This document shows, in pieces, positions 1,483 through 54,078 of a DNA stretch of 64,000 bases (its first letter is position 1; every line of letters starts with the position of its first letter). Made by a program: the position numbers and the translations under genes. This DNA is from Macrostomum lignano. Lineage: Eukaryota. The notes under the pieces are model-generated. The model did not search any database. It was not told the DNA's origin and was given only the letters and a program-made list of their open reading frames with translations. The stretch lies in contig NIVC01001653.1 in assembly GCA_002269645.1 (NCBI GenBank), positions 1 to 64,000 on the forward strand, written 5' to 3'.

Positions 1483-3290
1483 TTAGTCAATGATAGGCTT
1501 AGTCAGTAGTTTACTCAATCGGTAGGTTAGTCAATCGGTAGGTTAGTCAATCGGTAGCTTAGTCAATCGGTAGCTTAGTCAATCTGTAGCTTAGTCAATC
1601 GGTAGCTTAGTCAATCGGTAGCTTAGTCAATCGGTAGCTTAGTCAATCGGTAGCTTAGTCAATCGGTAGCTTAGTCAATCGGTAGCTTAGTCAATCGGTA
1701 GCTTAGTCAATCGGTAGCTTAGTCAATCGGTAGCTTAGTCAATCGGTAGCTTAGTCAATCTGTAGCTTAGTCAATCGGTAGCTTAGTCAATCGGTAGCTT
1801 AGTCAATCGGTAGCTTAGTCAATCGGTAGCTTAGTCAATCGGTAGCTTAGTCAATCGGTAGCTTAGTCAATCGGTAGCTTAGTCAATCGGTCGCTTAGTC
1901 AATCGGTAGCTTAGTCAATCGGTAGCTTAGTCAATCGGTAGCTTAGTCAATCGGTAGCTTAGTCAATCGGTAGCTTAGTCAATCGGTAGCTTAGTCAATC
2001 GGTAGCTTAGTCAATCGGTAGCTTAGTCAATCGGTAGCTTAGTCAATCGGTAGTTTACTCAATCGGTAGCTTAGTCAATCGGTAGCTTAGTCAATCGGTA
2101 GTTTACTCAATCGGTAGCTTAGTCAATCGGTAGCTTAGTCAATCGGTAGCTTAGTCAATCGGTAGCTTAGTCAATCGGTAGCTTAGTCAATCGGTAGCTT
2201 AGTCAATCGGTAGCTTAGTCAATCGGTAGCTTAGTCAATCGGTAGCTTAGTCAATCGGTAGCTTAGTCAATCGGTAGCTTAGTCAATCGGTAGCTTAGTC
2301 AATCGGTAGCTTAGTCAATCGGTAGCTTAGTCAATCGGTAGCTTAGTCAATCGGTAGCTTAGTCAATCGGTAGCTTAGTCAATCGGTAGCTTAGTCAATC
2401 GGTAGCTTAGTCAATCGGTAGCTTAGTCAATCGGTAGCTTAGTCAATCGGTAGGTTAGTCAATCGGTAGCTTAGTCAATCTGTAGCTTAGTCAATCGGTA
2501 CCTTAGTCAATCGGTAGCTTAGTCAATCGGTAGCTTAGTCAATCGGTAGCTTAGTCAATCTGTAGCTTAGTCAATCGGTAGCTTAGTCAATCGGTAGCTT
2601 AGTCAATCGGTAGCTTAGTCAATCGGTAGCTTAGTCAATCGGTACCTTAGTCAATCGGTAGCTTAGTCAATCGGTACCTTAGTCAATCGGTAGCTTAGTC
2701 AATCGGTAGCTGAGTCAATCGGTAGCTTAGTCAATCGGTAGCTTAGTCAATCGGTAGTTTACTCAATCGGTAGCTTAGTCAATCGGTAGCTTAGTCAATC
2801 GGTAGCTTAGTCAATCGGTAGCTTAGTCAATCGGTAGCTTAGTCAATCGGTAGCTTAGTCAATCGGTAGCTTAGTCAATCGGTAGCTTAGTCAATCGGTA
2901 GCTTAGTCAATCGGTAGCTTAGTCAATCGGTAGCTTAGTCAATCGGTAGCTTAGTCAATCGGTAGCTTAGTCAATCGGTAGCTTAGTCAATCGGTAGCTT
3001 AGTCAATCGGTAGCTTAGTCAATCGGTAGCTTAGTCAATCGGTAGCTTAGTCAATCGGTAGCTTAGTCAATCGGTAGCTTAGTCAATCGGTAGCTTAGTC
3101 AATCGGTAGCTTAGTCAATCGGTAGCTTAGTCAATCGGTAGCTTAGTCAATCGGTACCTTAGTCAATCGGTAGCTTAGTCAATCGGTAGTTTACTCAATC
3201 GGTAGCTTAGTCAATCGGTAGCTTAGTCAATAGGTAGCTTAGTCAATCGGTAGCTTAGTCAATGACTATCGGAGTAAATCAGTAGCTTAG
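1483..3290. repeat. 16-bp minisatellite (AGTCAATCGGTAGCTT)n, about 110 copies
   Basis: Highly homogeneous tandem units with rare variants (TAGTTTACTC, TACC, TGTAG). Confidence 0.97.
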
Positions 3291-4254: not shown

Positions 4255-4830
4255 GGGGTTGTAGCCTAGTGGGTTGTAGCCTAGTGGGTTGTAGCCTAGT
4301 GGGTTGTAGCCTAGTGGGTTGTAGCCTAGGGGTTGTAGCCTAGTGGGTTGTAGCCTAGTGGGTTGTAGCCTAGTGGGTTGTAGCCTAGTGGGTTGTAGCC
4401 TAGTGGGTTGTAGCCTAGTGGGTTGTAGCCTAGGGGGTTGTAGCCTAGTGGGTTGTAGCCTAGTGGGTTGTAGCCTAGTGGGTTGTAGCCTAGTGGGTTG
4501 TAGCCTAGTGGGTTGTAGCCTAGTGGGTTGTAGCCTAGTGGGTTGTAGCCTAGTGGGTTGTAGCCTAGTGGGTTGTAGCCTAGGGGTTGTAGCCTAGTGG
4601 GTTGTAGCCTAGTGGGTTGTAGCCTAGTGGGTTGTAGCCTAGTGGGTTGTAGCCTAGTGGGTTGTAGCCTAGTGGGTTGTAGCCTAGTGGGTTGTAGCCT
4701 AGTGGGTTGTAGCCTAGTGGGTTGTAGCCTAGTGGGTTGTAGCCTAGTGGGTTGGAGCCTAGTGGGTTGTAGCCTAGTGGGTTGTAGCCTAGTGGGTTGT
4801 AGCCTAGTGGGTTGGAGCCTAGTGGGTTGG
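4255..4830 (+). repeat. 15-bp tandem array (GGGTTGTAGCCTAGT)n, about 38 copies, equal to the SINE 5' end and A-box
   Basis: The unit is identical to the start of the SINE copy at 27589 (GGGGTTGTAGCCTAGTGGTTAGAGCG). Confidence 0.95.
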
Positions 4831-5115
4831 AGCGACGGACTCCGACTGAAAGGTCGGGGGTTCGATTCTCGACCCAATCGGAACGATTTGTGTCCTTGAG
4901 CAAGACACTTAACTCTGCATTGCTTCAGTTCACCCAGCTGTAAAATGGGTGCCAGCATTAGCTGGGGTAATTGAGGCTGTGTGGCGACCCCCCCAGTCCT
5001 TGGACTGAAAGCCGTACACAGCCTTCAGATACGCCGCGCAATGGCTGCGGCTGAGCTGTCGGTTGCACATCTGGCCCAATTGGGGCAGGTGTAATCAATA
5101 ATAATCATTATTATT
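4255..5115 (+). mobile_element. tRNA-derived CORE-type SINE whose 5' end is tandemly amplified
   Basis: B-box GGTTCGATTC, followed by a MIR-CORE-like block (TGTGTCCTTGAGCAAGACACTTAACTCTGCATTGCTTCAGTTCACCCAGCTGTAAAATGGG), a 3' region shared with the copy at 11507, and an AAT/ATT tail. Confidence 0.85.
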
Positions 5116-5568: not shown

Positions 5569-5801
5569 GGAAATTCCAAAGAATTATTTCTCTATCCACG
5601 CAGATTCGTGTCCCGCTATTTCCTAGAAACATCACGAACCTGTTGCTATTTTTAGCAACAGCCGCATTGGGTCACCCCCGGCCCCCGCCAGCCAGGCAAA
5701 ATGGTGGGCGCTGCGGCGACGGCGGCGGCGGTGCCGAAATCTGTGAAAACTAGGAATTTCCAGGGAATTGAGTAGCACCATCTGGACGATGCTGATATAA
5801 A
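5569..5801 (+). promoter_or_regulatory. Putative promoter: TATAAA (5796-5801), kB-like sites (5569-5577, 5753-5761) and STAT/GAS-like sites (5620-5628, 5758-5767)
   Basis: The motifs GGAAATTCC, GGAATTTCC, TTCCTAGAA, TTCCAGGGAA and TATAAA are directly visible 60-290 bp upstream of the ATG at 5861. Function is inferred. Confidence 0.4.
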
Positions 5802-5860: not shown

Positions 5861-6971
5861 ATGCGACTCAATTTGCTGCTCGCTTTGATGTTCACCTCGG
5901 CGGCCGCCTGCGAGCTGCCGATGCTGGGCGAGGAGCTCGGCCGCCGCGGCTGCCAGGAGCGGCGTCACCTGGCCCGCGGCATCGACCTCGCCTATCGGCA
6001 CTTGCAGAAAGTCCGCCTGCTGCTGAGCCGGTTCGAGTCGGCTGCTGGGACCACCGATGCCGAAGGTGGCGGCGACAGCAACTCGTGGTGTTGGAAGCCG
6101 CTGACAGCTGCGGCAGAGCAGCAGGACTGCGACTTGGTGCGCCTGGCTGAGTTCCGACTGCGCCTGATGACCGCTGCAGTGCGCGGCCTGCAGACCTGCC
6201 CAGGATGGTAGGCTTAGCAACTGGCTTTTTTCCGATTCGAAAATACCCCAAGCTCGAAAAATACCCCACGCTCGAAAAATACACCACGCTCGAAAAATAC
6301 CCTAGGCTCGAAAAATACCCTAGGCTCGAAAAATACCCTAGGCTCGAAAAATAGTGGGTTGTAGCCTAGTGGCTTCGAAAGTTCGAAAGTTCGAAAAATA
6401 CCCCACCCCAAGCTCGAAAAATACCCCACCCCAAGCACAAAAAATACTCCAAGCTCATAAATTCCCCAAGCTAAACACAATCTATCTCGTCTGCAGCGAT
6501 CGGGATTCAGTCTGGCTCGCCCGCCACCTCGCACGGCGCATCTTCGCCCTGAACGCCACAGTCTTCAGTGACTTGCCAAGGCCGCAGTCGCCGGAATGGC
6601 CGCAGTCGCTGCAGTCGGAGGCGGCCCGTCAGCTCGCCTGCCTGGAGGCGGCCGCCAAGCCGGCGCAGGCAGCGTCAGCCAGCCTTCAGCGGCCGTGGAG
6701 CCGGCGGCGGCGTCAGCGCTGGCTCGGCCGGTTTGTCACCGAGTTGCGCGCAGCGGCGGCGGAGCTTGAGTCGGAGTTCGGCGCCCAACCGGCCGCGGAG
6801 CTCCTGGCTTCGGCCAACGACGAGGCCGAATGCAACCAACTCGTCAAGGAGGAGCAGGCCGACCAGCTGACAGCGTTGACAGACGACTACAGCGGCAGCG
6901 TCACCTGGGAGACCAGCACAGTGAGGAGCGCGGACATTGCGGATCTGGAGACGAGTTCCATCGCTACTTGA
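5861..6971 (+). CDS. Secreted, mostly alpha-helical Cys-containing protein, 273 aa; exons 5861-6207 and 6497-6971; helical-cytokine-like (hypothesis)
   Basis: Signal peptide MRLNLLLALMFTSAAA. A phase-2 GTAGGC...CTGCAG intron joins ORF 5861..6211 to ORF 6354..6971 in frame (TG+C = Cys, giving CPGC). Both exons are GC-rich, and a CTAAAC branch-like motif precedes the acceptor. Confidence 0.7.
6237..6475. repeat. Degenerate ~18-bp tandem repeat (CTCGAAAAATACCCTAGG-like) filling the intron
   Basis: Repeated CGAAAAATACCC units are visible. Confidence 0.85.
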
Positions 6972-7704
6972 TGACGCATGCTCAGGGACTCTCTTTAGCA
7001 CAAGGACGCTCGGTACGTGTTCGAACAGCTTCCAAAGAGTCAGCGATAAACGCGCAAATCCGATTCTTGCACCGAAGGTTCCCGGATTTGATCGATTTCT
7101 TTGAGGCTAATATCTAAGGCTATGTTAGACTTCTTATTCGTGGACTGTGAGAGCTACAGGGCTCTGTCTGCTAGCAATTGTATGCTCTTTTCGGAATGTT
7201 TGTATTACTTTCTTTGACCCCAACTGGGGGGCCAGATCGCTAGTCCATGCACTAAACAGATTTGTGGTCTTCTAAAATTCAGCTATCCAAAAGCGTCAAT
7301 GAGGCTTGAATAATTCTGCCTAATGTTAATTGCAGGTTTCGCAGCAGTGCTTTTGCAGGGTTATAATCATACTGTCCACTCTCGTACAATATTTAATTCA
7401 CACATTTGCTAACTCCGCTAGTGGCTTTCTGCGACATTCATTGCACTACAATCCGTTCGCATAATTCAGTAAAACACAGATTTCTAAAAATGCTTCATTG
7501 CCATATATATTTTACTTAATAGAAGAATTTCGAATTTTTAGTAATCTGTTTTATGATCCGCCGTTTTGCGAATGATAAATAAATAGCTTCTTCTCAGTGT
7601 GTTTATTCATCAATACCCTTCGCTCACTCGCTTGAATCTTGTTAATACGACAAAATTTGGTAAAATTTATGAATGCGTTTGCCTGGAATATGACTAGAGT
7701 TTAA

Positions 7705-7900
7705 TAGATCATGACGAGACTATGACTAAATTAGACTAGATCATGACTAGACTATGACTAGATTAGACTAGATCAAGACTAGACTATGACTAGATTAGAC
7801 TAGATCATGATTAGACTATGACTGGATCATGGCTAGATCATGACTAGACTATGACTGGATCATGACTAGACTATGACTGGATCATGACTAGACTATGACT
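7705..7900. repeat. Degenerate 22/33-bp repeat (GATCATGACTAGACTATGACT...)
   Basis: Tandem units are visible. Confidence 0.85.
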
Positions 7901-8395
7901 GGGCCGCAAGCCACCGCCGCCACTGAATGACGACGTCGTCGACTTTGCTGACGTCACGGCCACCGCCGCTGCCGCCCCAGCCGACTGCGGCGCTGATTTG
8001 GGCAGGCCGGCGCTTGCGCGGACCTCGCGCTCGATGTCGTCAAGCTCGTGGCGGACCCGGTCTAGCAGTCCGGATGGGCCGACTTTGCCGGGTGCCGGTG
8101 CCGCTGAAGTGGTCGATGATGGAGCCGGTTGCCTCGGCGGTTCGCGCCGCCTATCCTGTGCGACAGCGGTCGGCGGCGATGCGTCCAGCGACTTGTCGCG
8201 CTGCTGCATCCAGGCGTCACGGCGGCTCTGCAGCTCGCGCAGGCGCTCTTGAAGGTCCGGACGACCGGCCGCGACTCCGGCGGGGCCCCAGAAGTCTTGC
8301 CTCGACCGGCGCCACCGCCGCCAGCGCGCTTGCCGCCCCCGTTTGATGGGGCTGGGCCGAAGGACATTCCAAGTGGATCACGGGAGCGACAACGG
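7871..8395 (-). CDS. Probable terminal coding exon of a minus-strand gene (low-complexity, coiled-coil-like), frame uncertain
   Basis: GC-rich island in AT-rich DNA with a TTCCAG acceptor at 8396-8401 on the minus strand. Natural-looking segments (DLQERLRELQSRRDAWMQQRDK; LLDRVRHELDDIEREVRA) are present, but a frame change seems needed near 8290-8300. Confidence 0.35.
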
Positions 8396-10245: not shown

Positions 10246-13172
10246 ATGTCCCGCCAGCCAGCCAAAGGTCGCGCAGACCGCGGGAAAGGAGCCCAGTCCA
10301 CGCCGAATCCGGCTGTGCAGAATGAAATCATTCCTGGAAAATTCACAGAACACGACTGGTAATGAATGCTCTTTCCCGTGTCACCTACGCTGCGCCTCAA
10401 TTTCTTAAATGATTTGTGTAAGTATTCCCTCCCCAAAACTCTCGCCAGGAACCTGGCCATGGGACCCAGCGAAAACGAGGAATTCGTGCTGGGCATCGTG
10501 AATGATGTTGTTGACACGGCGTTGGCGAGATTTACGAGAAGTACCTGCAGCGACAGCTCATTCCCTACACTGTGTCGCTGGCCAAGGATGCTATGCTGCA
10601 AATTATTGAGGTATTTTTTGGACTTCTAATTCTGTAGCTTTTTATCGTACACGTGTTAATTTAATTATGATTTCAAGCCAAAGCAACAAAGTAGAAGCCC
10701 CACTGATTATTTGGAGTCCTTGAAGCTCATGAAGACTCACCCCGCCTCCCCCTCTCGCCCCAGTGGAATTTTCTGTCCCACGACGAAGGCGAGAGCCCGG
10801 ACCGCCTGACCGGCGAGGCCTGGTCCGAGGACCGCGAGCCGGCATCGGCCACCATCGACTCCTGGGGCCAGGGCTGCATCCCCAAGACGGTGCTCACGCC
10901 GCGTTCTTCGCGACTGTCAACCCCGGCTCCGCAGCCGGAGGCCATCGCTGAGGAAGACGACGCCGACCTCGTAGAAGCGGCGGCGGCGGCGGCCGAGTCA
11001 TCTGGGGTAGATGAGGAAGCGGAATTCGCCGCAGCGACTGCGGAGGCTGAGGCGGAGACGGCCACCGGCCCCGAGTCGGAGGAGGCGGCCCCGGCCGGAG
11101 CCTCAGCAGAGCAGGGCAGCTCCAGGCCGGGCGCCCGGTTCCGCTTCCGGCCGTACCGCGGCAAGCTGAAGTCGGCTGGCCTGTCGGCAATGAGTGAGAC
11201 GCTTCTGGAGACCGAGCTGCGCCTGCGCGATGTCGATGATCCGCGGCGTGGCGCGGCCGCCGAGGCGGCTGGAGGAGGCAGCGGCGGCGGCGGCGGCGTA
11301 GGCGGCATGCCGACCTCCTGCCTGAGCATCCTGAAAGTGCAGGCGGGCCGGCCGCCCGGCAACAAGGAGGTGATCTACGACGAGGCCGGCAATGTTGTCA
11401 GCGTGGTGAAGATCCCGGCGGATCGCCTGCCCTCGCACAGGTGAGTGAGGAGAGAGTGAGTAGCGCTGAATGGTGTTTTCGCCATAGACTAAATGGCTGT
11501 CCTAAAGGGTTGCAGCCTGGTGATTAGAGCGTCGGGCTCACGTTGATAGGTCGGGGGTTCGTTTCCGATCCCACCCGGAACAGTTTGTGTTCTTGAGCAA
11601 GACACTTAACGATCTGCATTGCTTCAGTTCACCCAGCTGTAAAATGGGTGCCAGCATTAGCTGGGGTAATTGAGGCTGTGTGTGGCGACCTTCCAGTCCT
11701 TGGACTGAACAGCCGTACGCAGCCTTCAGATACGCCGCGCAATAGCTGCGGCTGAGCAGTCGATTGCACATCTGTCTATTAGGGAAGGTGCAATAAAAAA
11801 AATAATACTTCCTCACAGCAGCTGATACAGTACGGGCGAATTTAAATTTACATAACTACTATAGTAAAAGGCCTTTATGGTTTAAAGCATTGATGTGACA
11901 CATCTATAGGGCAAATGCTATCAAACTACTTTTCCAAAATTAAACTTCATAGTGCGGACTGGCTTTCCCGCTTGAGAACTGTGATTATTTTGCAAGCCAA
12001 CCTGAAAAACACATACGCAGCTCCACTTCGCTGCCAGACCGACTCAGGCCAGCCAGTGGTAGCTCAGAGCCCAGGTAACAATCCACCCAGGTAGCAACTG
12101 GCTCCGGTGTACTCTCTTTGTCGGAAGTCACTTTTTGCGTTTTTCACGGAAGTCACTAAAATATTTAAACGAATAACACTAATATTATACCGCAAAAAAC
12201 AGCCACAATTAATTGTTACAAATTCTCCCATTCAAAATACCAGAGCTAACTTCAGTTTAACAATTATGGAATGTCTCTACTCTGTATATTTTAGTTATTT
12301 TTTACTATCTACATTATTTTATTACTATCTACATGTATTGCGCTACTTGCATCACTTCCATTGTTTATCTATGCGTGCATCACTTCCATTGTTTATCTAT
12401 GGCCTGTGCATCACTCCATTGTTTATCTATGGCTTGTGCATCACTGCCATTGTTTATCTATGGCTTGTGCATCACTGCCATTGTTTATCTATGGCTTGTG
12501 CATCACTGCCATTGTTTATCTATGGCTGTGCATCACTGCCATTGTTTAACTATGGCTTGTGCATCACTGCCATTGTTTGTCTATGGCTTGTGCATCACTG
12601 CCATTGTTTATCTATGGCCTGTGCATCACTGCCATTGTTTATCTATGGCTTGTGCATCACTGCCATTGTTTATCGATGCCCGCAGGGTGAACGTCGGCTA
12701 TCGCGTGCTGCAGGCGGAGCTGGAGGCAGAGAAGGCTCGCCTAGAGGCGCTCAAACGCGGAATTCGGGTACCGCAGGCTGGCGCGGGCGGGGCGCCGACA
12801 GCGGCTGGCCGGCGGCAGGTGGCAGCCTCCTCGGATCCGCGTCTGCCGCAGCAGGCGCCGAGCGGCCCGGCGCCCGACCAGAAGGTGGAGGCGCTGCCGC
12901 CGTCGCTAGTGGAGACCATCGACCTGGCGCCAGGCGTCAGCGTTCGCGAGGGCGGCCTCGTCCGCTCCGGGCCGCCGGCGCAGCGGAACGGCAACGAGAA
13001 GTTCGCCGAGATCCACCTGAAAGGCCTGCGGCCCGTGCAGGCCCGCCTGGCCGCTGGCGAGCCGCCGAAGGTGACGGCGACAGACCTGCTGCCTGCGGGC
13101 AGGGTGGCTGTGCGGCCGCCCATCAACGGCCGACAGCCGATCCCGCCCATCCAGCCGGCCGCCGCCCGCTGA
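10246..13172 (+). CDS. C2orf81: C2orf81-like (DUF4639) protein; exons 10246-10358, 10449-10610, 10764-11440, 12686-13172; apparent 1-nt deletion near 10525
   Basis: The spliced translation gives EIIPGKFTEHDW...EEFVLGIVNDVVD...YEKYLQRQLIPYTVSLAKDAMLQIIE|WNFLSHDEGE...WSEDREPASATIDSWGQGCIP. This matches the C2orf81 motifs recalled as DIVPGRL..EW / YL.QQCIPFTI.QA..AML.I.EWRFL..DEGE / W.ED.EP...TDSWAQG. All introns are GT-AG with consistent phases. Confidence 0.85.
11507..11806 (+). mobile_element. Full-length CORE-type tRNA SINE in intron 3 of the C2orf81-like gene
   Basis: A-box-like GGGTTGCAGCCTGGTG, B-box-like GGTTCGTTTCC, the CORE block, the shared 3' region and an A-rich tail. Clearly homologous to 4830-5115. 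Confidence 0.85.
12345..12675. repeat. 31-bp minisatellite (CCATTGTTTATCTATGGCTTGTGCATCACTG)n abutting the exon-4 acceptor
   Basis: About 10 tandem units are visible. Confidence 0.93.
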
Positions 13173-14679: not shown

Positions 14680-17600
14680 ATGGCAGCCAACTTTCTCTCA
14701 CTGCCCCCACCTGAGCCATTCTCAGTATCAGCAGACCCACACAACGCGGGCAAGCGCTGGAGTCAATGGGCGGACCGCTTTGAAGACTTCATCGATGCAT
14801 CAGGCATCACCAACGAGAAGCAAAAGTGCAAACTACTCAGCTACACAGCAGGCAAGGAAATCGCCGACATCATCCGCGAGGAGGCCAAGCCTGCAGCGGC
14901 CACAGAGGACGGCTAAGTCACCCTCAAGCAGACGCTGGACGCTTTGAAGACATTCTTCAACGGAAGAAAGAACATAGTATTCGCCAGATATCAGTTCCGC
15001 CTATGCACCCAGGCCACCGGAGAGTCCATCGAGTCCTGGTACGCCAGACTGCGCACTGCGGCAGAGCCGTGCGACTTCGAGCAGCTGAAGGACTCGCTCA
15101 TCAGAGACCAGCTCGTGGCAACCTGCAGCTCTGACAAGCTGCGCAGGCGGCTGCTTCAGGAGGCGAACATCAGCTTGGAAGAGGCCTTGCGAAAGGCGAG
15201 GGCATTCGAGGCTGCTGAGGAACAAGCCACGGAGATGGAGAAGACAGACTCGCACGTGGCCAGCGTTGCCAAGGGCGACAAGGTGAGAACGAACAGGCGT
15301 GGCCCGGCTCAGACGACCAGCAGGCCCGGCGACCAGCAGCAGCGCACCTGCTACCGCTGCGGCGAGAAAGGCCACGCTACCTGCGACGCTGCCAAGGGCA
15401 AGATCTGCCACAACTGCGGTAAGCCCAACCACCTCGCTCTTGCCTGCCGTCAGCCTCGGCAGTCAAACAGCAGCCGGATTCCACAGCAGCAAATCAGCAC
15501 CAATGCTGTATTCACAGCTGCCGACGGCTCCGTCAACGAGGATGTGTTTGCGCTGTACAACCGCGACAAATACCCATCCGACGTCTCACTGACTGTGCAG
15601 GTGGCAAACCGGCAGCTTCCCATGATGATTGACAGCGGAGCCAGCTGCAGTATCATGAGTCTCGGCACCTTCAGAGCGCTCAGCCTGCCAAGCCCACGCC
15701 CTACAAGAGCCGAAGTTCGCGCCTACGGGGTACCGACACCTCTCAGGATTGTGGGTACCGCCGATCTTGACATCCAAGTGGGATCTGCCAGAACAACCGC
15801 GACCTTCCACATCATGGACGGCGACGGCCTGACGATACTGGGGCGTCAGCCCGCATTCAAGCTAGGAGTGCTGAAGATCCAGCGACCTGAAGCTACCAAG
15901 CCGCAAAACATAAACGCCATCGCCGACACCACACCCTCCAAGCAGTGTAGCGACCCCCAGCTCAAGGCCATCCTGCAGAGGCACAAAGAAGTCTTCAACG
16001 GCATCGGCTGCATCAAGGGTGTAGAGGTCCAGATCCAGCTGTCCGATGACGCTGTTCCAGTCTGCCAGGCGCCCTCACGTGTGGCGGCGCACCTGAAAGA
16101 GGCCGTAGTTGACGAGCTCAAGGCTTTGGAGGAGCAGGGCATCATTGAGGCAGTCAAAGGTCCTAGCGCCTGGGTGTCACGCATGGTGGTGGTGCCCAAG
16201 GACGACGGTGGCGTTCGAATCTGCCAGGACCTCCGTGATCTCAACGCTTTCGTCATCCCAGAGAAGCAGCAAATCCCCACGCTGGATGAAATCACCGAGG
16301 AAATGGCAGACGCCAAGCTGTTCAGCGAACTCGATATCCGGAAGGCTTTTTATCAGATCCCAGTCCACGAGAGCAGCCGTCACCTCTTCACCTTCAGCAC
16401 GCCCCTCGGACTGATGCCGCTCAAGAGGCTCAGCATGGGGTTCACAAATGCCTCGGAAATCCTTCAACGAGTCATGCTTGGCATCCTCAGCGGCATCGAC
16501 GGCGTCCGGTGGGCGCACGACGACGTGGTGGTATACGCCTCCGACCTGAAGCAGCACCATGAGAGGCTGGACGCCTGCCTTCAACGCCTCCGAGAGTTCG
16601 GGATCACCCTCAATCAGGACAAGTGCAGGTTCGCCCGGCCGACTGTCGAGTTTCTCGGGATGCGCCTGACCGCCCGGGGCATGCAACCGGCCACCGAGAA
16701 AATTGACGCCATGCAGAACTTCCGAGAGCCCTCCAACGTGGCCGACGTCCGCTCTTTCCTGGGAACCGCTAACTTCCTGGCAAAGTTCATCCCAAACTTC
16801 GCTGACCTCGCGGCCCCACTCCGGCAGCTGACGAAGAAGGGCCAAGCCTGGGAGTGGACAGAAAAACACACAGCGGCGTTTAACGGCATCAAGAAGGCAT
16901 TCTCAGACGCGGACACGCTGGCCTTTTTCGACCGCAGGCTGCACACGGAGCTCCTGGTGGACGCATCGCCGATCGGCCTCGGCGCCATCCTCACGCAGCG
17001 GCAGCCAGACGGCAACAGCAGACCCGTCGCCTACGCCAGCAGAGCCCTCTCGCCGGTGGAGCAGCGGTACGCGCAGATCGAGCGGGAGGCGTTGGCCATC
17101 AAATTTGGGTGTCTAAAGTTTGAGCACTATCTGGCTGGCGACCCAGACTTCACCGTGGTGACGGACCACCGACCACTCGTGCCGCTTTTCAAGCCTGGCT
17201 CCCGTCCGCCACCGCGGATCGAGCGAATGGCACTGCGCATTCAGCATCTCCGCTTCAACCTGCTCTACCGGCCAGGCTCGACCAACCCGGCTGACCTGCT
17301 GAGTCGGCAGCCACTGCCAGAGCGGCGTCGGAATGTAGGTGAAGAGCTCGACGCCGCCTTCATCAACGCCGTGTCGACCGGGGCCGTGCCAAAGGGCTTC
17401 AGTCTCGACCAGGTTCGGGAAGCATCGCGCACCGACAGGGACGTCCAGGCGGCGCTGAACGCGATTCGAACCGGCCGCTGGGACATGCGAGCGGCAGCCC
17501 AGCGCTCCTTCAAGTCCATCAGCGGCGAACTGTCAGAAAGCGACGGAGTATTACTCCGCGGTGACCTCATCGTCATCCCCGAGTCGCTGCGCAGGCCGAT

Positions 17601-18759
17601 CCTTCAACTGGCGCACACCGGTCATCTGGGCGCCGATCGCACCCTTAAACGCCTGCAGACGAAGGTGTGGTGGCCTCGGATGCGCAGCGACTGCGAGCTC
17701 TTCGTCCAGTGCTGCACACTGTGCCAGGCTGCGGCCACCGGATTGCGACAGACACCATTGAGGCCGACAGATATTCCGGACGGTGCCTGGCTGCTACTAG
17801 GTATGGATTTCTACGGCCCAGTGCAGGGCCAGATGCTCCTGGTCACCACCGACTTGTATTCAAAATACCCAGAAGTCAATTTTCTCAACTCGACGACGGC
17901 GGAGAGCGTGATCCCCCACCTGCGGAGGCTGTTCGGCAGATACGGCGTCCCGATTGAGGTGGTCACCGACAACGGCCCGCCATTCAGCTCGGCAGCTTTC
18001 CGCAGCTTCCTCGCTTCGTACGGCATTCACCACCGCCTCATCTGCCCGCTGCACCCAGAATCCAATGGAGCGACGGAGCGAGTCAACCGCAGCATCGGGA
18101 AAGTGATTCAGACGGCAGTGGCCGAAGGTCGTAACTGGCGGGAGGCTATCGAGGACTGGCTGTTGGCGTTCCGCACGACACCACATCGAGCGACCGGCCG
18201 CGCACCTGCTGAGCTACTCATGGGCAGGACGATGAACGACGGCATCCCGACCATCAAACCATCACAGCTCATCGACGTTAACCATGAAGAGGTACAGAGC
18301 TGGCACAGAAACTATGTCCAAGACATGAAGGCGCGCTTCGATGATCGCAAGGGTGTCAACGAGCACGGCGTCAGAGTCGGCAACAAAGTTCTGCGAAAGA
18401 AGCAGCAACGTAACAAACTGCAGCTGCCGTTCGAGCCACATCCTTGGACAGTCAAGCAGGTCCAGGGAGACACGTGTGTCCTGCAACGCGGCGAACAGTC
18501 CTGCATGCGCCACGTCTCGCAGCTGCGGCCCCTGGTCGGAGAGCCTGCCGGCCAGCCTGCCGGAGAGCCTGCCGGCCAGCCTGCCGGAGAGCCTGCCGGC
18601 CAGCCTGCCGGAGAGCCTGCCGGCCAACCTGCCGGCGAACCTGCCGGCCAACCTGCCGGCCAACCTGCCGGAGAGCCCGCCGGTCTACCCAGCGGTAGCA
18701 TCGCCACGCGAGAACATCCAAGAGCTGCCCGTAACAGAGTGCTCAGCTACAAATTGTGA
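14680..18759 (+). CDS. Gag-Pol polyprotein of Gypsy A, with an in-frame TAA at 14914-14916
   Basis: Two CCHC knuckles (CYRCGEKGH; CHNCGKPNH), protease IDSGAS, RT core with WAHDD, RNase H (VDASP...IERE...TDH), and integrase HHCC plus D,D,E (MDF, TDNGP, ERVN). ORF 14944 is in the same frame as the ATG at 14680. Confidence 0.92.
18536..18690 (+). repeat. 24-bp coding repeat (EPAGQPAG)n at the integrase C-terminus
   Basis: GAGCCTGCCGGCCAGCCTGCCGGA units are visible. Confidence 0.9.
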
Positions 18760-23452: not shown

Positions 23453-24550
23453 AAGCTGCGACTGACTACGCACCATCACGAACTACCCACGCTGGTTATC
23501 GTATAAACGACACTAATGTAGCACTTTAGTTTGAAACATGACCCGTTAATCTCTTTTTTCTCGCTCCCTCAAGCAGGCTTTTTTTCCCAGCTGAAAAAAA
23601 TCAATGACTTATTTGTTCGATTTTAAATAAACGAGTTTTATAACAGTGCATCTATAGTAAGCATACTATGAAGTAGAAAAGTACGATTGCAACAACGGTG
23701 TGCATGTGTTCAAGCGAATTTGCGACAGCAATGCGGTGGGCTAAAACTGAACTGTGATAAAGTATTGTGCAGAACTTTAAACAAAAGATTGCATGCTGAG
23801 CAGATCTGCTCAAACAGACAGACTCTTGGGCGTATCGTAGGAAATTCTAATTAAAATTCTTTCCAAGCTGCATCTGGTTCGAGACTGTGTGCCTCTCTTT
23901 GTCTTGCTGGTTCGTTTACTCAGAGAGCAGCGTTTAAACAATCTAAGGCTTCTTTTAAAGCCGTCCTATTTTGTAGAGCGTCTTTCAAAAAACTTACAAA
24001 AGTTTTAGTCTTATCTACTACTAAAAGTATTGAGATTGAATGGCCAAGGCGGACAAGGTGCTTCCGGAGCTATACATGCTGAAATGTTTGGCCTCAGAAA
24101 GTATAGTTACCAGGAACGCACCAGAAAGACAGCTGGGGACTTTGGACTGGGATGAGGGAGTGTTTCCACTGTACAATGCATTTCGCTTCACTGCCCTCGA
24201 ATTTTCAGCTGCGTCCCACACAGAGTCAGGCCCGGCCCCGTGTGAACCAGAATCTGAAAGAACATTGAGGGATGAGGGAAAGGGAGGGTTCAGTCCCGAG
24301 GTTTGAATGCGGCTAATATCTTTTACTGCAGGAAAGGCTTGGAACCTTTCGATCCTGCACAAACAAGAGGGATGGGATGAGGGGTGAACCAGGCGGAACA
24401 CTAGAGACCCAGGTACCTGACCTAACGGAAGAATCTGTAGACTGAAGCAAATAAGAGGCTGCAATTCCTTGGCTCGATCCATTGGCAAGACAGTATTACA
24501 GTTTGAAAAATTGAAAAAGGTGCGATTGATTGACAAACAGCAAGAAAGCA

Positions 24551-26745
24551 ATGCCGACAGTTCGCAGTGTTGTCAGGAACTTCCACGAGTATGGTCACAG
24601 AACGTCAATGCACGGTCTGGGCCATATGTACCAGAGCGGCGATCTGTGCCGGAAGGCGTTCTGGTTCGTGCTGACCATTGCGGGAACCTGCGCCTGCTTC
24701 TTCCACGTGATCATGACGGTGCAGAACTACTTGGAGACGCCGGTCACCTCCATTCTGATTGATGACGCAGCGATGGCCGAGTTCCCGGATGTGACCCTGT
24801 GCAACTTGAAGCCGATGTCCGAGTCGCTGGGCGAGTACTACAAGGATGTGGTGCACCAGCACTTTGAAGACAATTGGGGCTTCTTTGAGCAGTGGTGGCC
24901 TAATGAGAGAAAACGGCAGGTTAATGAGTCCCGAGTTGACTATCAGCGAAGACTTAGGAAAATATTTGAGCGCTACCTGCAGATATTCTGGGTGTCGGAC
25001 GACAGCCGAGACCTCGGCATGATGGACAAGGTGATGCTGCTGCACTGCTCCTTCAATGGAATTCCGTGCGGCCACAAGAACTTCAGTCTGGTGCAGAACT
25101 ACCGGTACTGGAACTGCTACACGTTCAGTCCGTCGCCGCAATTCAGATTTGCAAGCAGCGGTCACACTGAGGACACGGGCTTGAATCTGATTCTGTACAC
25201 GGATAGCAACTTTCACGAGTCAATCTACGACCAATTCGCTGCTTATAGTCGACAAAAGTTTGACGAAGAAGAGATGACGCATCCCTATTCGCTAAAGGAG
25301 TACATTACGACAGGTGGACGCACTTTCAATAGAATTCTTTCAGGCGGGCGGTACGACATTGAAGGCATTAGAATCTGGCTGCACATGAGAGTTGATCATC
25401 CCATGATGTGTAAGTTTTAATCTGATTTACTGTGTGAAACGCCTGTATTAATATGCAAGTAAATACACGCATGCGTGCCATGCCATTTTATTTCCAGCCT
25501 CGATATACAACGACGTTCAAAACGGCAAGTCGGCTTTGGTTCACGTGGATCAGATGCAATACGTGACTCTGAACCAGCCAGGCGAGCGGCAATGCACCAA
25601 TGATCCGCAGGAGATCATTGAGTACACAACCAGCTTCGGTCACAACCCCAGCACCGAGAGGAAGCGCCGGTACACCAAAACCGACAGAGAATTCGCGGTG
25701 GAGGCGAAGCAGCAATTCGTGTTCGATAACTGCGGCTGTTATTCGCATCATTTCCCTTTCCACGTCAATCTGACGCAGCTCTGCTATTTCGTGCCGCTGG
25801 CGCTCAGGCGACACCCGAGCAAGAAGCTGCTGGACCGCGTAGCTTGCCACGACGAACACCTGCGCATAGCTGAAGAGAACTCGTACAATTTTATCCAGGA
25901 CTACCTCAAGTACAAGCCCTGTGAGTACAGGAAGTTCACCACATTCAAGACCATCAGCACATGGCCTAGAAGCGATGAGCACATCGACTTTGTGAACGAG
26001 TTCCTCATCCCCAAGATGCAGAGCGGCAAGGAGTTCATCGGCAAAGGAGACGCTCACGTGCATCACATTTTCAATTTTACCAATGAAAACTCTGCCGCGT
26101 TATTAAATAAACCGATCTTGAGCCACGAGGAGCTGGCACTGAGTCGACTGCTCAACCAGGATTGTCATCCGAACAAGAGTGCGGAGGACTCAATCCGCGA
26201 CATGTGGTGCTTAGACAAGGAAAAGATGGCCTACAACGTGCTGCAAGTGATTATCAGACTTACTTCACCAGCGGCTGCGAAATACGAGGAGAAATTCAGC
26301 TACGAATGGCCGGAAGCTCTCTCTGAAGTGAGTTACTGAAGTCCTGAAGCAGGGAGAGCGTATGTTTTGCGACCTGTAATTATTTAATGATCCTTAAATA
26401 TGCTGAAGCTTAGAATCAAGCTTTGCTCATGTAACGTCGCATAGGTCTCAGCTTAATAAAAATTGCTACACAACATCACTATTTCATTTATCTCAGATCG
26501 GTGGAATATTCGGCCTGTGGGTTGGAATGAGCCTGCTGACTTTCTTCGAATTCATTGAGCTTTTCTACGTCATGGTCGTCAGCCGCGATTCCAGGCCTCA
26601 GCAGCAGCCGAGCGGCGATCGCGAGAGTCTGCCAAATAGCAGCAGCATGCAGCATCAGATGGAGCTGCTGCTCAGCCGCCTGATGGAGGAGGAAACGATC
26701 CGGCGAGCTCCCGGTCCCGTACAGATGACAGCAGGGCGACGGTGA
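24551..26745 (+). CDS. DEG/ENaC (amiloride-sensitive channel family) subunit 1, about 645 aa; exons 24551-25409, 25498-26327, 26497-26745
   Basis: Pre-TM1 TSMHG motif, TM1, FPDVTLCN, CSFNG, YWNCYTF, a Cys-containing thumb, and TM2 IGGIFGLWVGMSLLTFFE. Intron phases are consistent. Confidence 0.95.
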
Positions 26746-28302: not shown

Positions 28303-30462
28303 ATGCCCCCTACACGGCGCAGCGTATTGAAAAAATTCCACGAATATGGCCACAGGTCGTCCATGCACGGCCTGAGCCACATGTACCACACTAACGACAA
28401 CTGTCGAAAAATCTTCTGGTTCGTGCTGACCATCGTTGGCACTTTTGCCTGCTTCTTTCACGTCACCATGACAGTGCAGAACTACTTGGAGACGCCGGTC
28501 ACGTCCATTCTGATTGACGACTTAGTTAAGGCTGAGTTCCCGGATGTGACCCTGTGCAACTTGAAGCCGATGTCCGAGTCTCTGGGAGAGTACTACAAGA
28601 ATGTGGTGTATCAGCACCTTAACAGCACCTTCAATTTCTTCGACAACTGGTGGCCAGAGAAGCGAAAGCGTCGAGCCAATGAGTCCCGAGTTGCGTATCA
28701 TCGAAGGCTGAATGACATATTCGAACGGTTTTTGCAGATATTCTGGGTGTCGGACGACAGCCGAGACCTAGGCATGATGGACAAGGTGATGCTGCTGCAC
28801 TGCTCCTTCAATGGAATTCCGTGCGGCCACAAGAACTTCAGTCTGGTGCAGAACTACCGGTACTGGAACTGCTACACGTTCAGTCCGTCGCCGCAATACA
28901 GATTCGCAAGCAGCGGTCACACGGAGGACATGGGCTTGAATCTGATTCTGTACACGGATAGCAACTTTCACGAGTCCGTCTACGAAGCAATGACTTCGTA
29001 CAGCCGGAAGAAAACGGATGAAGAAGAGATGATGAAGCCGTACTCACTGCGGGAGTTAATCACTAGTGGCGAACGCACTTTTAACCAAATCTTGTCAGGC
29101 GGTCGGTACGATATCGAAGGCATTAGGATCTGGTTGCACAGCCAGTATGACTATCCCATGCTTTGTAAGCTTGCCTATCTCAACTTTATCGCATTATTTT
29201 TCATCGTACAGATTTTCTCTCAAATCCACTTGTTTCAGCCAATACCTACATAGACCTACAGAACGGCTTCTCCGCCATGCTAGACGTCGACCAGACCAAA
29301 TACGTGACGCTGAATCAGCCGGGTGAGCGCGAGTGCACCATGGCGAAGCAGCCGAACATCTGGTATGTGACCAGCTTTGGCAGCAATTCTAACGGCATTC
29401 GACGACGAAAGTACACGAGGACGGACCGCGAGTCAGTCGTGGAAGCCAAGCAGCAGTACGTCTACCGCAAGTGCCGCTGCTACTCTCACCATTTTCCATT
29501 TCAAGTGAACACCACGGAGCTCTGCTACTATGTCTCCAAGGAGCACAGCGTCAATCCGCCTGGCGAGCTGATTAATCGGATCTCCTGTCACGACGCGTCC
29601 GTCTTGGAGGCGGAGGCCGATTCCTATAAGTATATTAAACAATTTCGGAACTTTAAGCCGTGCGAATACACAAAGTTCATCGCGTACAAGACCTCAAGCT
29701 CCTGGCCAAGAAACGATGATTATATTTCATTCATCAATGAGTACTTGCTGCCCAATTTGTACAACGGTTCGGAATACATCAACGTTGAGACAGACCAGCA
29801 CTCTCATCATATTTTTAACTTTTCCGATCCTAGCGTTGTGGCAGTTCTCAATGGTTCTGAGCCACTGAGCCACGAGGACCTGGTCATCAAGGAAATGTTC
29901 ACCGGAGGCTATGGTTGCCCGAAGGATAATAAGACAGATGGCGAGCTTATCAACCGGTGGTGCATGGACAAGTCCAAACTATCATTCAACGTGCTGAGAG
30001 TCATCATCAAGCCGACTTCTCCTGCCGCAGCAAAATACGAGGAGAAATACAGCTACGAATGGCCGGAAGTGCTCTCTGAGGTAGCTTTTTCAATGCTTGC
30101 TCACCAAATTGTTTCAAATTTTTACCGTTTTTTTAGCTTTTCGAATAAATACATGGCTTTTATACCAACAGATTGGCGGTATCTTTGGCCTGTGGGTTGG
30201 CATGAGCCTGCTGACATTCTTTGAGTTCATCGAGCTGGTGTACATAATTGCGGCAAACCGGACCGACCCACCCTCTGTGCTGCGCATCGATCAGAATTTG
30301 GCGCCGGAGCAGCTCGAGCAGCCGCTGAACCGCATCAATATTGATGAAATCGAGCTGACTGCCGGAGCAAAGTCGGAGCAGAATGCTGCGGAGGTGGTGA
30401 AGTCCGACGAAAATGATGGAGAGGCCAAGGAGGAGCCAGAAAATCACAGCAACGTCGTCTGA
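28303..30462 (+). CDS. DEG/ENaC subunit 2 (tandem paralog), about 664 aa; exons 28303-29164, 29239-30080, 30172-30462
   Basis: Same motifs (SSMHG, FPDVTLCN, GLWVGMS) and the same two intron positions and phases as paralog 1. Confidence 0.95.
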
Positions 30463-33800: not shown

Positions 33801-34884
33801 GATCATCGTGCCAGCGAGTCTTCGGCGAGTAGTACTCATGCTGGCGCACAAAGGCCATCAGTGCTGGCGGAAAACGCTAGACCGGCTTCAAACGAAGGTG
33901 TGGTGGCCAGGCATGAGGGGCGACTGCCAGGTCTTCGTGCAAAGCTGCCTCGCCTGCCAAGCAACGTCGCCTAAAACGACCAATCCGCCACCTCTTCAGC
34001 CCTCGCAGCTCCCCGACGGAGCCTGGCTCGTCCTCGGCATGGACTTCTACGGTCCGGTGCAGGACAAAATGCTGCTAGTGACAACAGACCTTTACTCAAA
34101 GTTTCCAGAGATCAACATCGTCAGTTCGACCTCCGCAGAGGCTGTGCTGCCACACCTGAAAACTCTCTTCAGCAGGTACGGCATCCCACAAGAAATCATC
34201 AGCGACAACGGCCCACCCTTCAATTCTGCAGAGTTCCACAACTTTCTCGCTGAGCAAGGCGTCAAGCACCGCCGCATCTGCCCGCTGCACCCGGAGGCCA
34301 ACGGAGCGACCGAGCGCGTCAACCGATGCGTCAACAAGGTCGTCAGGGCGGCCATCGCCGAAGGCCGCAGCTGGCGCAGTGCCCTAGACGACTGGCTCCT
34401 CGCATACCGCGTCACTCCTCATTCGGCAACCGGAGTCGCGCCGGCCGAATTGCTAATGGGCCGGACCTTCAACGACACCGTCCCGTCGGCGCGCCCCTCG
34501 CAGCCCGTGTACCATCATCGCACACAGCTGACCCAGCGACACTCGGCCTACACCAGAGCGATGGCCAGGGACTTCAACCGTTCCCGGAGGGCCAAGGCCT
34601 GCAGCGTGAGGCCGGGTACTGCGGTGCTACGGAGGCGAAATCAGCGAACAAAGACTCAGACACCCTTCGAGGTCGAGCCCTGGACCGTCGTGGACAGGCG
34701 GGGTGACTCCTACGTGCTACAACAGGGCGACCGCACCTGCACTCGACACCTGACGCACATCCGCCCGCTGGTGGCGGCAGAGGGCGCTGCGGCGAACGCG
34801 GAACCGACGCCGCCAGAATGCGGCATTGCCCATCGGCCGCATCCCCGCGCAGCCAAAGACAAGCCAATCAGCTACAAGGACTGA
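30885..34884 (+). CDS. Gag-Pol polyprotein of Gypsy B, with a +1 frameshift in the G run at 33071-33074
   Basis: CCHC knuckles, VDSGAS, WAHDD, RNase H and integrase. Removing one G gives KKGHVWSW, collinear with KKGQAWEW in copy A. Confidence 0.92.
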
Positions 34885-53824: not shown

Positions 53825-54078
53825 CAGGGGGGTCGCCACCTGGGGGGGGGCACATGCCAATGCTTTGTCATCCCACCTCACCTTGTGACCTGTTGTGGTA
53901 TTCAATAAGTTTGCTTCAGGGCGCCAGAATATAGCGCCTTTGACGCCAAGAGAGTGCTAGCAACACCGATTCTCAAAATAATGTACATGTAGGAATTTAG
54001 TCATGTACATGTAGCTCTTGCCTCGTAGAATTCTTAGCTTTGTACCCCCCCCCACCATGAAATCCATGGCGAGGACTG
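53825..54078. mobile_element. Possible MITE-like element with imperfect CAG..TCGCCA / G-run termini
   Basis: The left end CAGGGGGGTCGCCACCTG9 resembles the reverse complement of the right end, CAGTCCTCGCCATGG...G-run. No clean TSD was seen. Confidence 0.3.

What the first reader, a model, noticed from the sequence alone, without database searches (positions are those of the whole stretch)
5861..6971. Candidate invertebrate long-chain four-helix cytokine (IL-6/Unpaired-like architecture)
Seen: two separately listed ORFs splice into one 273-aa secreted protein. It has a signal peptide, amphipathic stretches (ERRHLARGIDLAYRHLQKVRLLLSRF; DLVRLAEFRLRLMTAAVRGL; SVWLARHLARRIFALNATVF; WSRRRRQRWLGRFVTELRAAAAELESEF), long loops after the first and third stretches, several Cys including a CPGC made by the splice, an NAT sequon and an acidic tail. 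Known: IL-6/LIF/CNTF-type cytokines have an up-up-down-down bundle with long AB and CD loops and an aromatic-x-x-basic motif opening helix D, and they diverge too fast for BLAST. Inferred: WSRR at the start of the last helix fits that motif. JAK/STAT ligands are poorly known outside insects and deuterostomes. The RRRRQR run could instead be a furin site, making this a prohormone-type precursor.
Basis: partly seen in the sequence, partly recalled or inferred. Interest (0 to 1): 0.75.

Follow-up and report, generated by a model that had tools for sequence, protein, structure and literature searches.

The report
Orphan secreted helical protein gene
This is a real two-exon animal gene for a secreted, mostly helical protein with no detectable relatives; it could be a missing invertebrate cytokine, but the test that would show this (the fold of the spliced protein) could not be run here.

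Summary
The sequence description holds. Exon 1 (5861-6207) and exon 2 (6497-6971) join through a GT..AG intron of 289 nt into an 822-nt reading frame of 273 aa. Two GC-rich islands match the exons exactly. Third-position GC is 0.82-0.83, and its phase shifts across the intron as the splice predicts.

The protein has:
- a signal peptide and 8 Cys, including CPGC across the splice;
- one NAT sequon and an RRRRQR run;
- a basic core (pI 9.2) and an acidic tail (pI 4.05).

Its amphipathic periodicity exceeds shuffles. The cytokine reading stays untested. They give about five core helices plus tail helices, and the supposed C-D loop is partly helical. There was no Pfam, PDB or Foldseek hit. The WSRR motif is unspecific. 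Missing homologues mean little, because control genes from the same window also found nothing.

One new observation: a 17-nt kappaB/STAT-like element occurs only twice in 64 kb, both times just upstream of this gene's TATA box.

Verdict: a genuine orphan secreted helical protein. A cytokine-like ligand is plausible (about 0.2-0.35) but unproven.

The parts
5569..5585 (+). Upstream element copy 1, GGAAATTCCAAAGAATT. It contains a kappaB-like GGAAATTCC overlapping a TTCN4GAA STAT-like motif.
   Evidence: One of only two matches in 64 kb to GGAAATTCC (0.30 expected) and to the 17-mer GGAAWTTCCARRGAATT. The flanks of the two copies are unrelated.
5753..5769 (+). Upstream element copy 2, GGAATTTCCAGGGAATT. 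Same orientation as copy 1, ending 27 nt before the TATA box.
5796..5801 (+). TATAAA box, starting 65 nt before the ATG. It is the only TATA-type match in the 460 nt upstream.
5861..6207 (+). Exon 1: ATG, signal peptide and residues 1-115, plus the first two bases of codon 116.
   Evidence: GC3 0.82. The GC island coincides with the exon.
5861..5908 (+). Signal peptide MRLNLLLALMFTSAAA, with predicted cleavage before Cys17.
   Evidence: Read from the sequence (n/h/c regions, Ala at -3 and -1). No signal-peptide predictor was available.
5951..6046 (+). Predicted helix A (residues 31-62).
   Evidence: AlphaFold2 on the exon-1 peptide, pLDDT 74-79 in this stretch. Hydrophobic moment up to 0.70.
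6047..6106 (+). A-B connection (residues 63-82), rich in Gly/Ser/Thr/Asp and containing Cys77.
   Evidence: Coil with pLDDT below 50.
6107..6190 (+). Predicted helix B (residues 83-110), containing Cys90.
6197..6207 (+). Exon-1 part of the CPGC motif (Cys113-Pro-Gly-Cys116). Codon 116 is completed by base 6497. The motif lies in the short B-C turn.
6208..6496 (+). Phase-2 intron of 289 nt (GT..AG), 45% G+C. It is filled with 17-23-nt minisatellites and a SINE-head fragment (6356-6372).
6497..6971 (+). Exon 2: last base of codon 116, residues 117-273, and the TGA stop.
   Evidence: GC3 0.83, sustained to the stop.
6501..6569 (+). Predicted helix C (residues 118-140), including the N135-A-T sequon (6552-6560).
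6603..6683 (+). It contains Cys164 and a Pro at 170.
   Evidence: pLDDT 55-58, low
6702..6719 (+). RRRRQR (residues 185-190). Either a furin-type R-X-K/R-R site or a basic cluster that binds glycosaminoglycans. It sits at the start of helix D.
6702..6779 (+). Predicted helix D (residues 185-210), the best-predicted part of exon 2.
   Evidence: pLDDT 66-73
6795..6968 (+). Acidic C-terminal tail (residues 216-273, pI 4.05) with predicted helices 212-222 and 225-246, Cys228 and a Ser/Thr-rich end.
7578..7583 (+). First AATAAA downstream of the stop. Putative polyadenylation signal, implying a 3' UTR of about 600 nt.

Best explanation
Shown: this is a genuine two-exon protein-coding gene of an animal genome. 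It encodes a 273-aa precursor with no detectable relatives in the databases I could search.

Read from the sequence:
- The precursor enters the secretory pathway and loses a 16-residue signal peptide.
- It can be N-glycosylated at Asn135.
- It has an even number of cysteines (8), enough for four disulfides.
- It consists of a basic core of about 200 residues, built from long amphipathic helices, followed by a 58-residue acidic tail.

Inferred: the core folds into a disulfide-stabilised helical bundle. The connection pattern is long A-B (20 aa), short B-C (7 aa, CPGC) and long, partly helical C-D (44 aa). That is the pattern an up-up-down-down cytokine bundle needs, with the extra helix in the second crossover as in five-helix interferon-type cytokines.

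Proposed working (inferred, not shown): it acts as an inducible extracellular signalling ligand of helical-cytokine type. Transcription would start from a TATA promoter carrying two copies of a kappaB/STAT-like element. The RRRRQR cluster would either tether the protein to the matrix, or be cut by a furin-type convertase to release the acidic tail and unmask the basic core.

My confidence that the gene and its secreted helical product are real is about 0.85. The 0.35 given here is for the function as a cytokine-like ligand.
For: Gene reality:
- Canonical splice sites and a closed 822-nt frame.
- GC islands matching the exons, third-position GC of 0.82-0.83, and the phase shift across the intron that the splice predicts.
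- Codon-position composition like the window's GPCR gene.
- A TATA box starting 65 nt upstream and an AATAAA downstream.

Protein architecture:
- Cys, sequon, basic run and pI values.
- Amphipathic periodicity beyond shuffles: 4 of 2000 reach the mean moment and 24 of 2000 reach the count of strong windows.
- Helices predicted at all four quoted stretches, 23-32 residues long, with a disordered 20-residue A-B loop and a 7-residue B-C turn.

Inducibility hint:
- GGAAATTCC occurs only twice in 64 kb (0.30 expected), both within 300 nt upstream of the ATG. Both copies sit in the same 17-nt context with unrelated flanks.

Open niche:
- Domeless ligands are unidentified in ticks and mites, and are called largely unknown for arthropods in a shrimp study (PMC11754740, PMC12027997, PMC9195186).
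- A mosquito Upd-like protein was recognised only in 2025 (bioRxiv 10.1101/2025.09.21.677592).
Against: - No fold evidence exists for the whole protein. Only the halves could be modelled, at mean pLDDT 62 and 53.
- Those models show 6-7 helices rather than 4.
- The isolated A-B half folds as an antiparallel hairpin.
- Foldseek finds only generic bundles, with no match at E <= 0.001.
- No Pfam hit at E <= 10. No credible PDB sequence hit. The CNTF comparison is not significant and not collinear.
- WSRR is an unspecific motif here.
- The promoter element was noticed post hoc, and its binding factors are guessed from vertebrate and Drosophila consensus sequences recalled from general knowledge.
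- The prior that an orphan secreted helical protein is a cytokine is low.
Confidence: 0.35

Rival explanations
1. Convertase-processed precursor. Furin cuts after RRRR188 (or after RRQR190). This yields a basic, Cys-rich N-terminal product (residues 17-188, 7 Cys) and an acidic C-terminal propeptide of about 85 residues, which neutralises or chaperones the basic part until secretion. That is the layout of prohormones and of cationic antimicrobial or cytotoxic proteins made with an anionic pro-piece. The active part is then a hormone or a membrane-active effector, not a receptor-dimerising cytokine.
For: - RRRR is an optimal R-X-K/R-R site, placed next to a predicted coil (179-184).
- There is a strong charge split: pI 9.2 for the core against 4.05 for the tail.
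- An LGRR at 26-29 resembles an amidation and cleavage signal (read from the sequence).
- A kappaB-like promoter element fits an immune effector equally well.
Against: - The basic run opens the most confidently predicted helix of exon 2 (185-210, pLDDT 66-73). Cleavage there would remove an amphipathic helix that looks like part of the bundle.
- The four dibasic loci observed are close to the roughly 2.8 I estimate by hand for a protein with 10.5% Arg (composition and sites).
- Cleavage would leave 7 Cys in one fragment and 1 in the other, so the chains would probably stay linked.
- 170 residues is large for an antimicrobial peptide.
Confidence: 0.2
2. Lineage-specific secreted helical protein without a signalling role. 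Examples would be a carrier or lipid-binding bundle, a secretion of a specialised gland (salivary, seminal), or a matrix component.
For: - No similarity to any known family.
- The gene sits in a region full of repeats and transposons, where young, fast-evolving genes are common.
- Amphipathic helices alone do not imply signalling.
Against: - Eight spaced cysteines, a single copy (no paralogue in the window) and a compact TATA promoter with a repeated element are less typical of bulk secretory or structural proteins. Gland-secretion families usually occur as tandem arrays.
- This reading predicts nothing specific.
Confidence: 0.25
3. Not a functional gene: a chance pair of open frames in GC-rich DNA, a decayed pseudogene, or a fragment derived from a transposon.
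For: - GC-rich DNA gives long ORFs in several frames here.
- There are no homologues and no transcript data.
- SINE copies and minisatellites surround and invade the locus.
Against: - Three-base periodicity is present in one frame only, and it changes phase exactly at canonical splice sites.
- The N-terminus is a well-formed signal peptide directly downstream of a TATA box.
- The frame is closed, with no internal stops.
- Amphipathic periodicity is far beyond shuffles.
- No transposon protein domain was found.
Confidence: 0.05

Closest known systems
Unpaired family (Drosophila Upd1-3; mosquito Upd-like, bioRxiv 10.1101/2025.09.21.677592; Anopheles gambiae AGAP013506 'UPD3', PMC8604914)
   Same: Secreted invertebrate proteins with a signal peptide and N-glycosylation. 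They are predicted to be helical and evolve so fast that BLAST often fails between orders. Induction on infection or damage is documented in that preprint for the mosquito Upd-like gene. From general knowledge, Upd1 is basic and binds the matrix, which could parallel the RRRRQR cluster.
   Different: Upd proteins are longer (about 400 aa, from general knowledge). The mosquito protein is described as having disordered regions rich in Pro, Lys and Ser around a central Unpaired domain. This protein has 273 aa, is rich in Arg, Ala and Leu, and has an acidic tail. No Upd sequence was available here, so homology was not tested.
Vertebrate IL-6/LIF/CNTF-type long-chain class-I helical cytokines
   Same: Size of the mature core (about 200 aa). 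Helices of 23-32 residues. A long A-B, short B-C, long C-D connection pattern. Cysteines near loop ends. A possible short helix in the C-D connection.
   Different: No sequence or profile similarity. Topology not established. Extra predicted helices and a 58-residue acidic tail. The 'site III' aromatic-x-x-basic motif is not specific in this sequence.
Five-helix (interferon / IL-10-type) helical cytokines
   Same: One long overhand A-B loop is followed by three short connections, with an additional helix forming the second crossover. This matches the order A, long loop, B, C, extra helix, D predicted here. The architecture of this class is from general knowledge.
   Different: This class is known only from vertebrates. 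There is no sequence similarity, and the prediction is low confidence.
Cationic secreted proteins made with an anionic pro-piece (for example mussel myticin-type precursors and eosinophil proMBP; from general knowledge)
   Same: A basic domain followed or preceded by a strongly acidic extension, separated by a basic cleavage site.
   Different: Those active domains are small, or beta-rich and Cys-rich. Here the basic part is a large helical domain, and the 'site' lies at the start of a predicted helix.

Membership tests
Long-chain class-I helical cytokines (IL-6/LIF/CNTF type) | Four long amphipathic alpha-helices (about 25 residues each) forming the core | tested here: inconclusive
   Helices are predicted at 31-62, 83-110, 118-140 and 185-210. 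Further helices are predicted at 152-178 and 212-246. Mean pLDDT is only 62 and 53. Amphipathicity exceeds shuffles.
Long-chain class-I helical cytokines (IL-6/LIF/CNTF type) | Up-up-down-down topology with long A-B and C-D crossover connections | not testable with these tools
Connection lengths of 20, 7 and 44 residues are compatible. The isolated A-B half folds as an antiparallel hairpin, which says little.
Long-chain class-I helical cytokines (IL-6/LIF/CNTF type) | Sequence or profile match to a cytokine family model or a solved cytokine | tested here: not met
   Pfam-A gives 0 families at E <= 10. PDB phmmer gives only a P450 at E = 0.036. BLASTP against CNTF (verified identical to 1CNT) gives E = 0.14 and is not collinear. 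This is expected even for true remote members.
Long-chain class-I helical cytokines (IL-6/LIF/CNTF type) | Structural similarity to solved cytokines | tested here: inconclusive
   Foldseek of the two low-confidence half-models against the PDB gives no match at E <= 0.001. Top hits are generic bundles and hairpins such as Csp, Dps and EsxA.
Long-chain class-I helical cytokines (IL-6/LIF/CNTF type) | Aromatic-x-x-basic receptor-site motif at the start of helix D (LIF/CNTF subgroup) | tested here: inconclusive
   W183-S-R-R186 is present, but [FWY]xx[KR] occurs at 5 of 16 aromatic residues in a protein with 12% K+R.
Long-chain class-I helical cytokines (IL-6/LIF/CNTF type) | Binds a gp130/Domeless-type receptor and activates JAK/STAT | not testable with these tools
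   There is no receptor sequence in the window and no way to co-fold or assay.
Unpaired (Upd) family | Detectable homology to Upd1-3 or to the mosquito Upd-like domain | not tested
   No Upd sequence could be obtained. The protein databases returned no hits even for the window's own control genes. I do not know whether Pfam-A holds an Unpaired model, so the empty Pfam result does not decide this.
Unpaired (Upd) family | Secreted, N-glycosylated protein | tested here: met
   Signal peptide 1-16 and sequon N135-A-T. These are sequence features only.
Furin-processed precursor (prohormone / pro-effector) | R-X-K/R-R site in an accessible segment between two domains | tested here: inconclusive
   RRRR is present at 185-188 after a predicted coil (179-184), but the model places it in the first turn of helix D.
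Furin-processed precursor (prohormone / pro-effector) | Dibasic sites more frequent than composition predicts, flanking discrete peptides | tested here: not met
   Four dibasic loci are observed. My hand estimate from 10.5% Arg is about 2.8 RR pairs expected. No repeated or discrete peptide units are present, and the two halves show no internal repeat.

The most novel reading that the evidence does not exclude
This is the endogenous helical-cytokine ligand of the Domeless/gp130-JAK-STAT pathway in an invertebrate lineage where no Unpaired homologue can be found by sequence. The window carries a SINE that, by my recollection of that domain, has a Nin-DC-like body. Among arthropods, that domain is listed only for the tick Ixodes (PMC5804259). 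The Domeless ligand is stated to be unidentified in ticks and mites (PMC11754740, PMC12027997). Its own promoter would carry Rel/STAT-type elements, giving an infection-inducible or self-amplifying loop.
Probability: 0.15. Interest if true: 0.85.

Novelty: new member of a known kind. Interest (0 to 1): 0.45.

Why it matters
JAK/STAT receptors, kinases and STATs are found across animals, but their ligands are known by sequence almost only from vertebrates and flies. A mosquito Upd-like gene was recognised only in 2025. Reviews state that ticks and mites have no identified Domeless ligand (PMC11754740, PMC12027997), and a shrimp study calls arthropod activators largely unknown (PMC9195186).

A secreted protein of the right size, with this helix and loop pattern and a kappaB/STAT-like promoter, is a cheap candidate to test. 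One structure prediction of the spliced protein and one co-fold with the species' receptor would largely settle it.

If the fold turns out otherwise, the result is still a correctly delimited, probably unannotated orphan gene for a secreted protein with a possible convertase site.

Tried and rejected
2. The search for homologous proteins with the whole protein: nothing at E <= 0.01.
   - Controls show this is uninformative. The window's GPCR ORF (Pfam 7tm_1, 6e-27) found nothing at 1e-20. The ASC-channel ORF (Pfam 8e-30) found nothing at 1e-3.
3. Exhaustive phmmer of the exon-1 peptide against 1.84 billion representatives: only two repeat-protein artefacts.
4. Pfam at E <= 10: nothing. PDB sequence search: a spurious P450 only.
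5. Foldseek of both half-models against the PDB: generic helical hits only.
6. A local resemblance I recalled between helix C (CDRDSVWLARHLARRIFAL) and CNTF helix A. The CNTF sequence was verified against 1CNT. BLASTP gives E = 0.14 and maps helix C onto helix A, so I rejected it as chance.
7. Paralogues in the window, as in a Upd-type gene cluster: none by tblastn.
8. Internal duplication of a two-helix unit (RHLARGI against RHLARRI): not significant, reached by 344 of 1000 shuffles.
9. Identifying the organism. None of these worked:
   - Rfam and tRNA scans were empty.
   - Peptide and repeat strings were not found in the paper library.
   - The exon-2 peptide and a SINE 26-mer were not found in metagenome or prokaryote-genome contigs.
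   - The Nin-DC-type SINE hints only at a tick or another non-insect invertebrate.
10. Bacterial-type promoter and terminator scan of the upstream region: irrelevant and at chance level.

Full report
**Context.** The window is animal DNA rich in repeats.
- It holds two Ty3/gypsy retrotransposons, two neighbouring genes for amiloride-sensitive (DEG/ENaC) channels, and a divergent rhodopsin-class GPCR.
- It has many minisatellites, including an 18-kb array of a 26-mer.
- It has no Rfam or tRNA matches.
- Two copies of a tRNA-headed SINE flank the locus. By my recollection of that domain, the SINE body resembles the Nin-DC conserved domain. Published carriers of that domain include Ixodes, molluscs, an annelid, a sea anemone, a sea urchin and amphioxus (PMC5804259).
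- The species could not be established. A mean G+C of about 0.47 with GC3 near 0.8 would fit a tick from general knowledge, but that is a guess.

**The observation.** Exon 1 runs from the ATG at 5861 to 6207 and is followed by GTAGGC. A pyrimidine-rich tract ending in CAG precedes exon 2 at 6497. The joined frame is 822 nt, coding for 273 aa, and ends at TGA 6969-6971.

This is more than two chance ORFs.
- G+C rises to 0.61-0.76 exactly over the two exons and is 0.43-0.46 in the intron and flanks.
- GC at the third codon position is 0.82 and 0.83.
- The GC-rich phase moves from coordinate%3=1 to coordinate%3=2 across the intron, which is what a phase-2 splice at these sites requires.
- Base composition by codon position resembles the window's GPCR gene.
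- A TATAAA lies at 5796 and the first AATAAA at 7578.
- One other in-frame acceptor (6413) exists, but it would add low-GC3 repeat-coded residues. No transcript data could be consulted.

**The protein.**
- Residues 1-16 form a standard signal peptide with Ala at -3 and -1.
- The mature chain has Cys at 17, 31, 77, 90, 113, 116, 164 and 228, one sequon (N135-A-T), and RRRRQR at 185-190.
- The core (17-215) has pI 9.2 and the tail (216-273) has pI 4.05.
- The periodicity is real. The mean moment is 0.325 against 0.242 +/- 0.028 in shuffles, reached by 4 of 2000. There are 38 strongly amphipathic windows against 11.8 +/- 8.8, reached by 24 of 2000.

**Fold.** The decisive test could not be run. 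I therefore folded the two exon products separately, without alignments.
- The exon-1 peptide (mean pLDDT 62) gives helices at 22-28, 31-62 and 83-110, with a disordered 63-82 loop.
- The exon-2 peptide (mean pLDDT 53) gives helices at 118-140, 152-178, 185-210, 212-222 and 225-246.
- The order is therefore A, 20-residue loop, B, 7-residue CPGC turn, C, 11 residues, an extra helix, 6 residues, D, then a helical acidic tail.
- This pattern is compatible with an up-up-down-down bundle in which the second crossover carries a helix. From general knowledge, that arrangement is seen in IL-6 and more fully in five-helix interferon-type cytokines. The pattern does not demonstrate it.
- Foldseek of both half-models against the PDB gives nothing at E <= 0.001. 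The hits are generic bundles and hairpins, as expected for low-confidence fragments.

**Similarity searches.**
- Pfam-A returns no family at E <= 10.
- The PDB sequence search returns one spurious P450.
- The whole protein finds nothing in the word-indexed database.
- The exon-1 peptide finds only two repeat-protein artefacts in an exhaustive scan of 1.84 billion representatives.
- These negatives are weak evidence. Two control ORFs from the same window with clear Pfam domains also found nothing in the word-indexed database, so at least that database lacks close relatives of this organism. No control was run for the exhaustive scan.
- No paralogue lies in the window, and the two halves are not an internal duplication.
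- A resemblance of helix C to CNTF helix A is not significant and not collinear.
- The 'aromatic-x-x-basic' argument fails as evidence, because the motif occurs at 5 of 16 aromatic residues.

**A new observation.**
- The 9-mer GGAAATTCC matches 9 of 10 positions of the kappaB consensus as I recall it, and 0.30 copies are expected in the whole window. It occurs exactly twice in 64 kb, at 5569 and 5753, both within 300 nt upstream of this gene's ATG.
- Both copies sit in the same 17-nt context, GGAAWTTCCARRGAATT, in the same orientation. Each overlaps a TTCN4GAA motif of STAT type, and their flanks are unrelated.
- This looks like a repeated cis-element rather than a duplication. It suggests inducible, possibly Rel- or STAT-dependent, transcription.
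- It was found post hoc, and the factor assignment is inference.

**Mechanism.** The best-supported account has a shown part and an inferred part.
- Shown: a real gene for a secreted, cysteine-bearing, amphipathic-helical protein with a basic core and an acidic tail.
- Inferred: a disulfide-stabilised helical bundle acting as an inducible extracellular ligand. The RRRRQR cluster would serve as a matrix-binding patch or as a furin site that frees the acidic tail.
- Probabilities: cytokine-like ligand 0.35, within which a true Domeless/gp130 ligand is about 0.15. Convertase-processed precursor of a hormone or cationic effector 0.2. Non-signalling secreted protein 0.25. Non-gene 0.05.

**Comparison with what is known.** It resembles Unpaired and IL-6-type cytokines in size, secretion and helix-loop pattern. 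Membership of either family is not established.
- Sequence criteria were tested and not met for the vertebrate families.
- Topology and receptor binding could not be tested.
- Homology to Unpaired could not be tested, because no Upd sequence was available.
- Literature shows why the candidate is worth a quick test. Anopheles has an annotated UPD3 (PMC8604914) and Aedes gained a Upd-like gene only in 2025 (bioRxiv 10.1101/2025.09.21.677592). Ticks and mites are said to lack any identified ligand (PMC11754740, PMC12027997).

**Verdict.** The finding is a well-delimited orphan gene with a suggestive but unproven cytokine-like architecture. Interest is moderate (0.45) and would rise sharply if a full-length model shows the cytokine topology.

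Noticed in passing
window 35926-53825 (also 1-699, 1506-3263, 55198-56097): There is an 18-kb tandem array of a 26-nt unit (CTTGTGAATGGCCGAGTCTAGATCTA, about 693 copies, 95% matches). It explains the uniform composition and GC skew of 36-54 kb. The window also holds a 16-mer array of 110 copies and two unrelated 34-mer arrays.
   Followed up: partly
window 4256-5100, 11524-11800 and 6356-6372: Two copies of a tRNA-headed SINE with a conserved body resembling the Nin-DC domain are present (79-100% identical blocks, 6.7 kb apart). The SINE head GGGTTGTAGCCTAGT has expanded into a 15-nt minisatellite of 38 copies next to the first copy. A head fragment also lies inside the candidate gene's intron. 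The Nin-DC assignment is from memory of the domain and was not aligned to a reference.
   Followed up: partly
window 14944-18759 and 30885-34884: There are two Ty3/gypsy retrotransposons. The first has an uninterrupted 1271-aa ORF (zinc knuckle, protease, RT, RNase H, integrase). In the second, pol is split into two ORFs between RT and RNase H near 33125-33172.
   Followed up: no
window 24530-26339 and 28303-30224: Two neighbouring genes on the same strand for amiloride-sensitive (DEG/ENaC, pickpocket-type) channels. Each starts with an ORF matching the first half of Pfam ASC (E about 1e-28 to 1e-30), followed by a second long ORF without a Pfam hit. Neither ORF tested found relatives in the protein database.
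   Followed up: partly
window 57253-58200: An apparently intron-free, divergent class-A GPCR (Pfam 7tm_1, 6e-27). Its best solved relatives are adrenergic receptors and invertebrate rhodopsins, at only E about 1e-14 to 1e-15.
   Followed up: partly
window 7900-8370, 10730-11440 and 12700-13170: Three further GC-rich islands (about 0.7 G+C at 7900-8370) carry long ORFs on both strands and have no Pfam match. They are possibly exons of unannotated neighbouring genes. The first lies about 900 nt beyond the candidate's stop codon.
   Followed up: no
window 5670-5735: A short, very GC-rich stretch (0.67 G+C, GCG/GCC repeats) lies about 60-125 nt upstream of the TATA box, between the two 17-nt elements. 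Its role is unknown.
   Followed up: no
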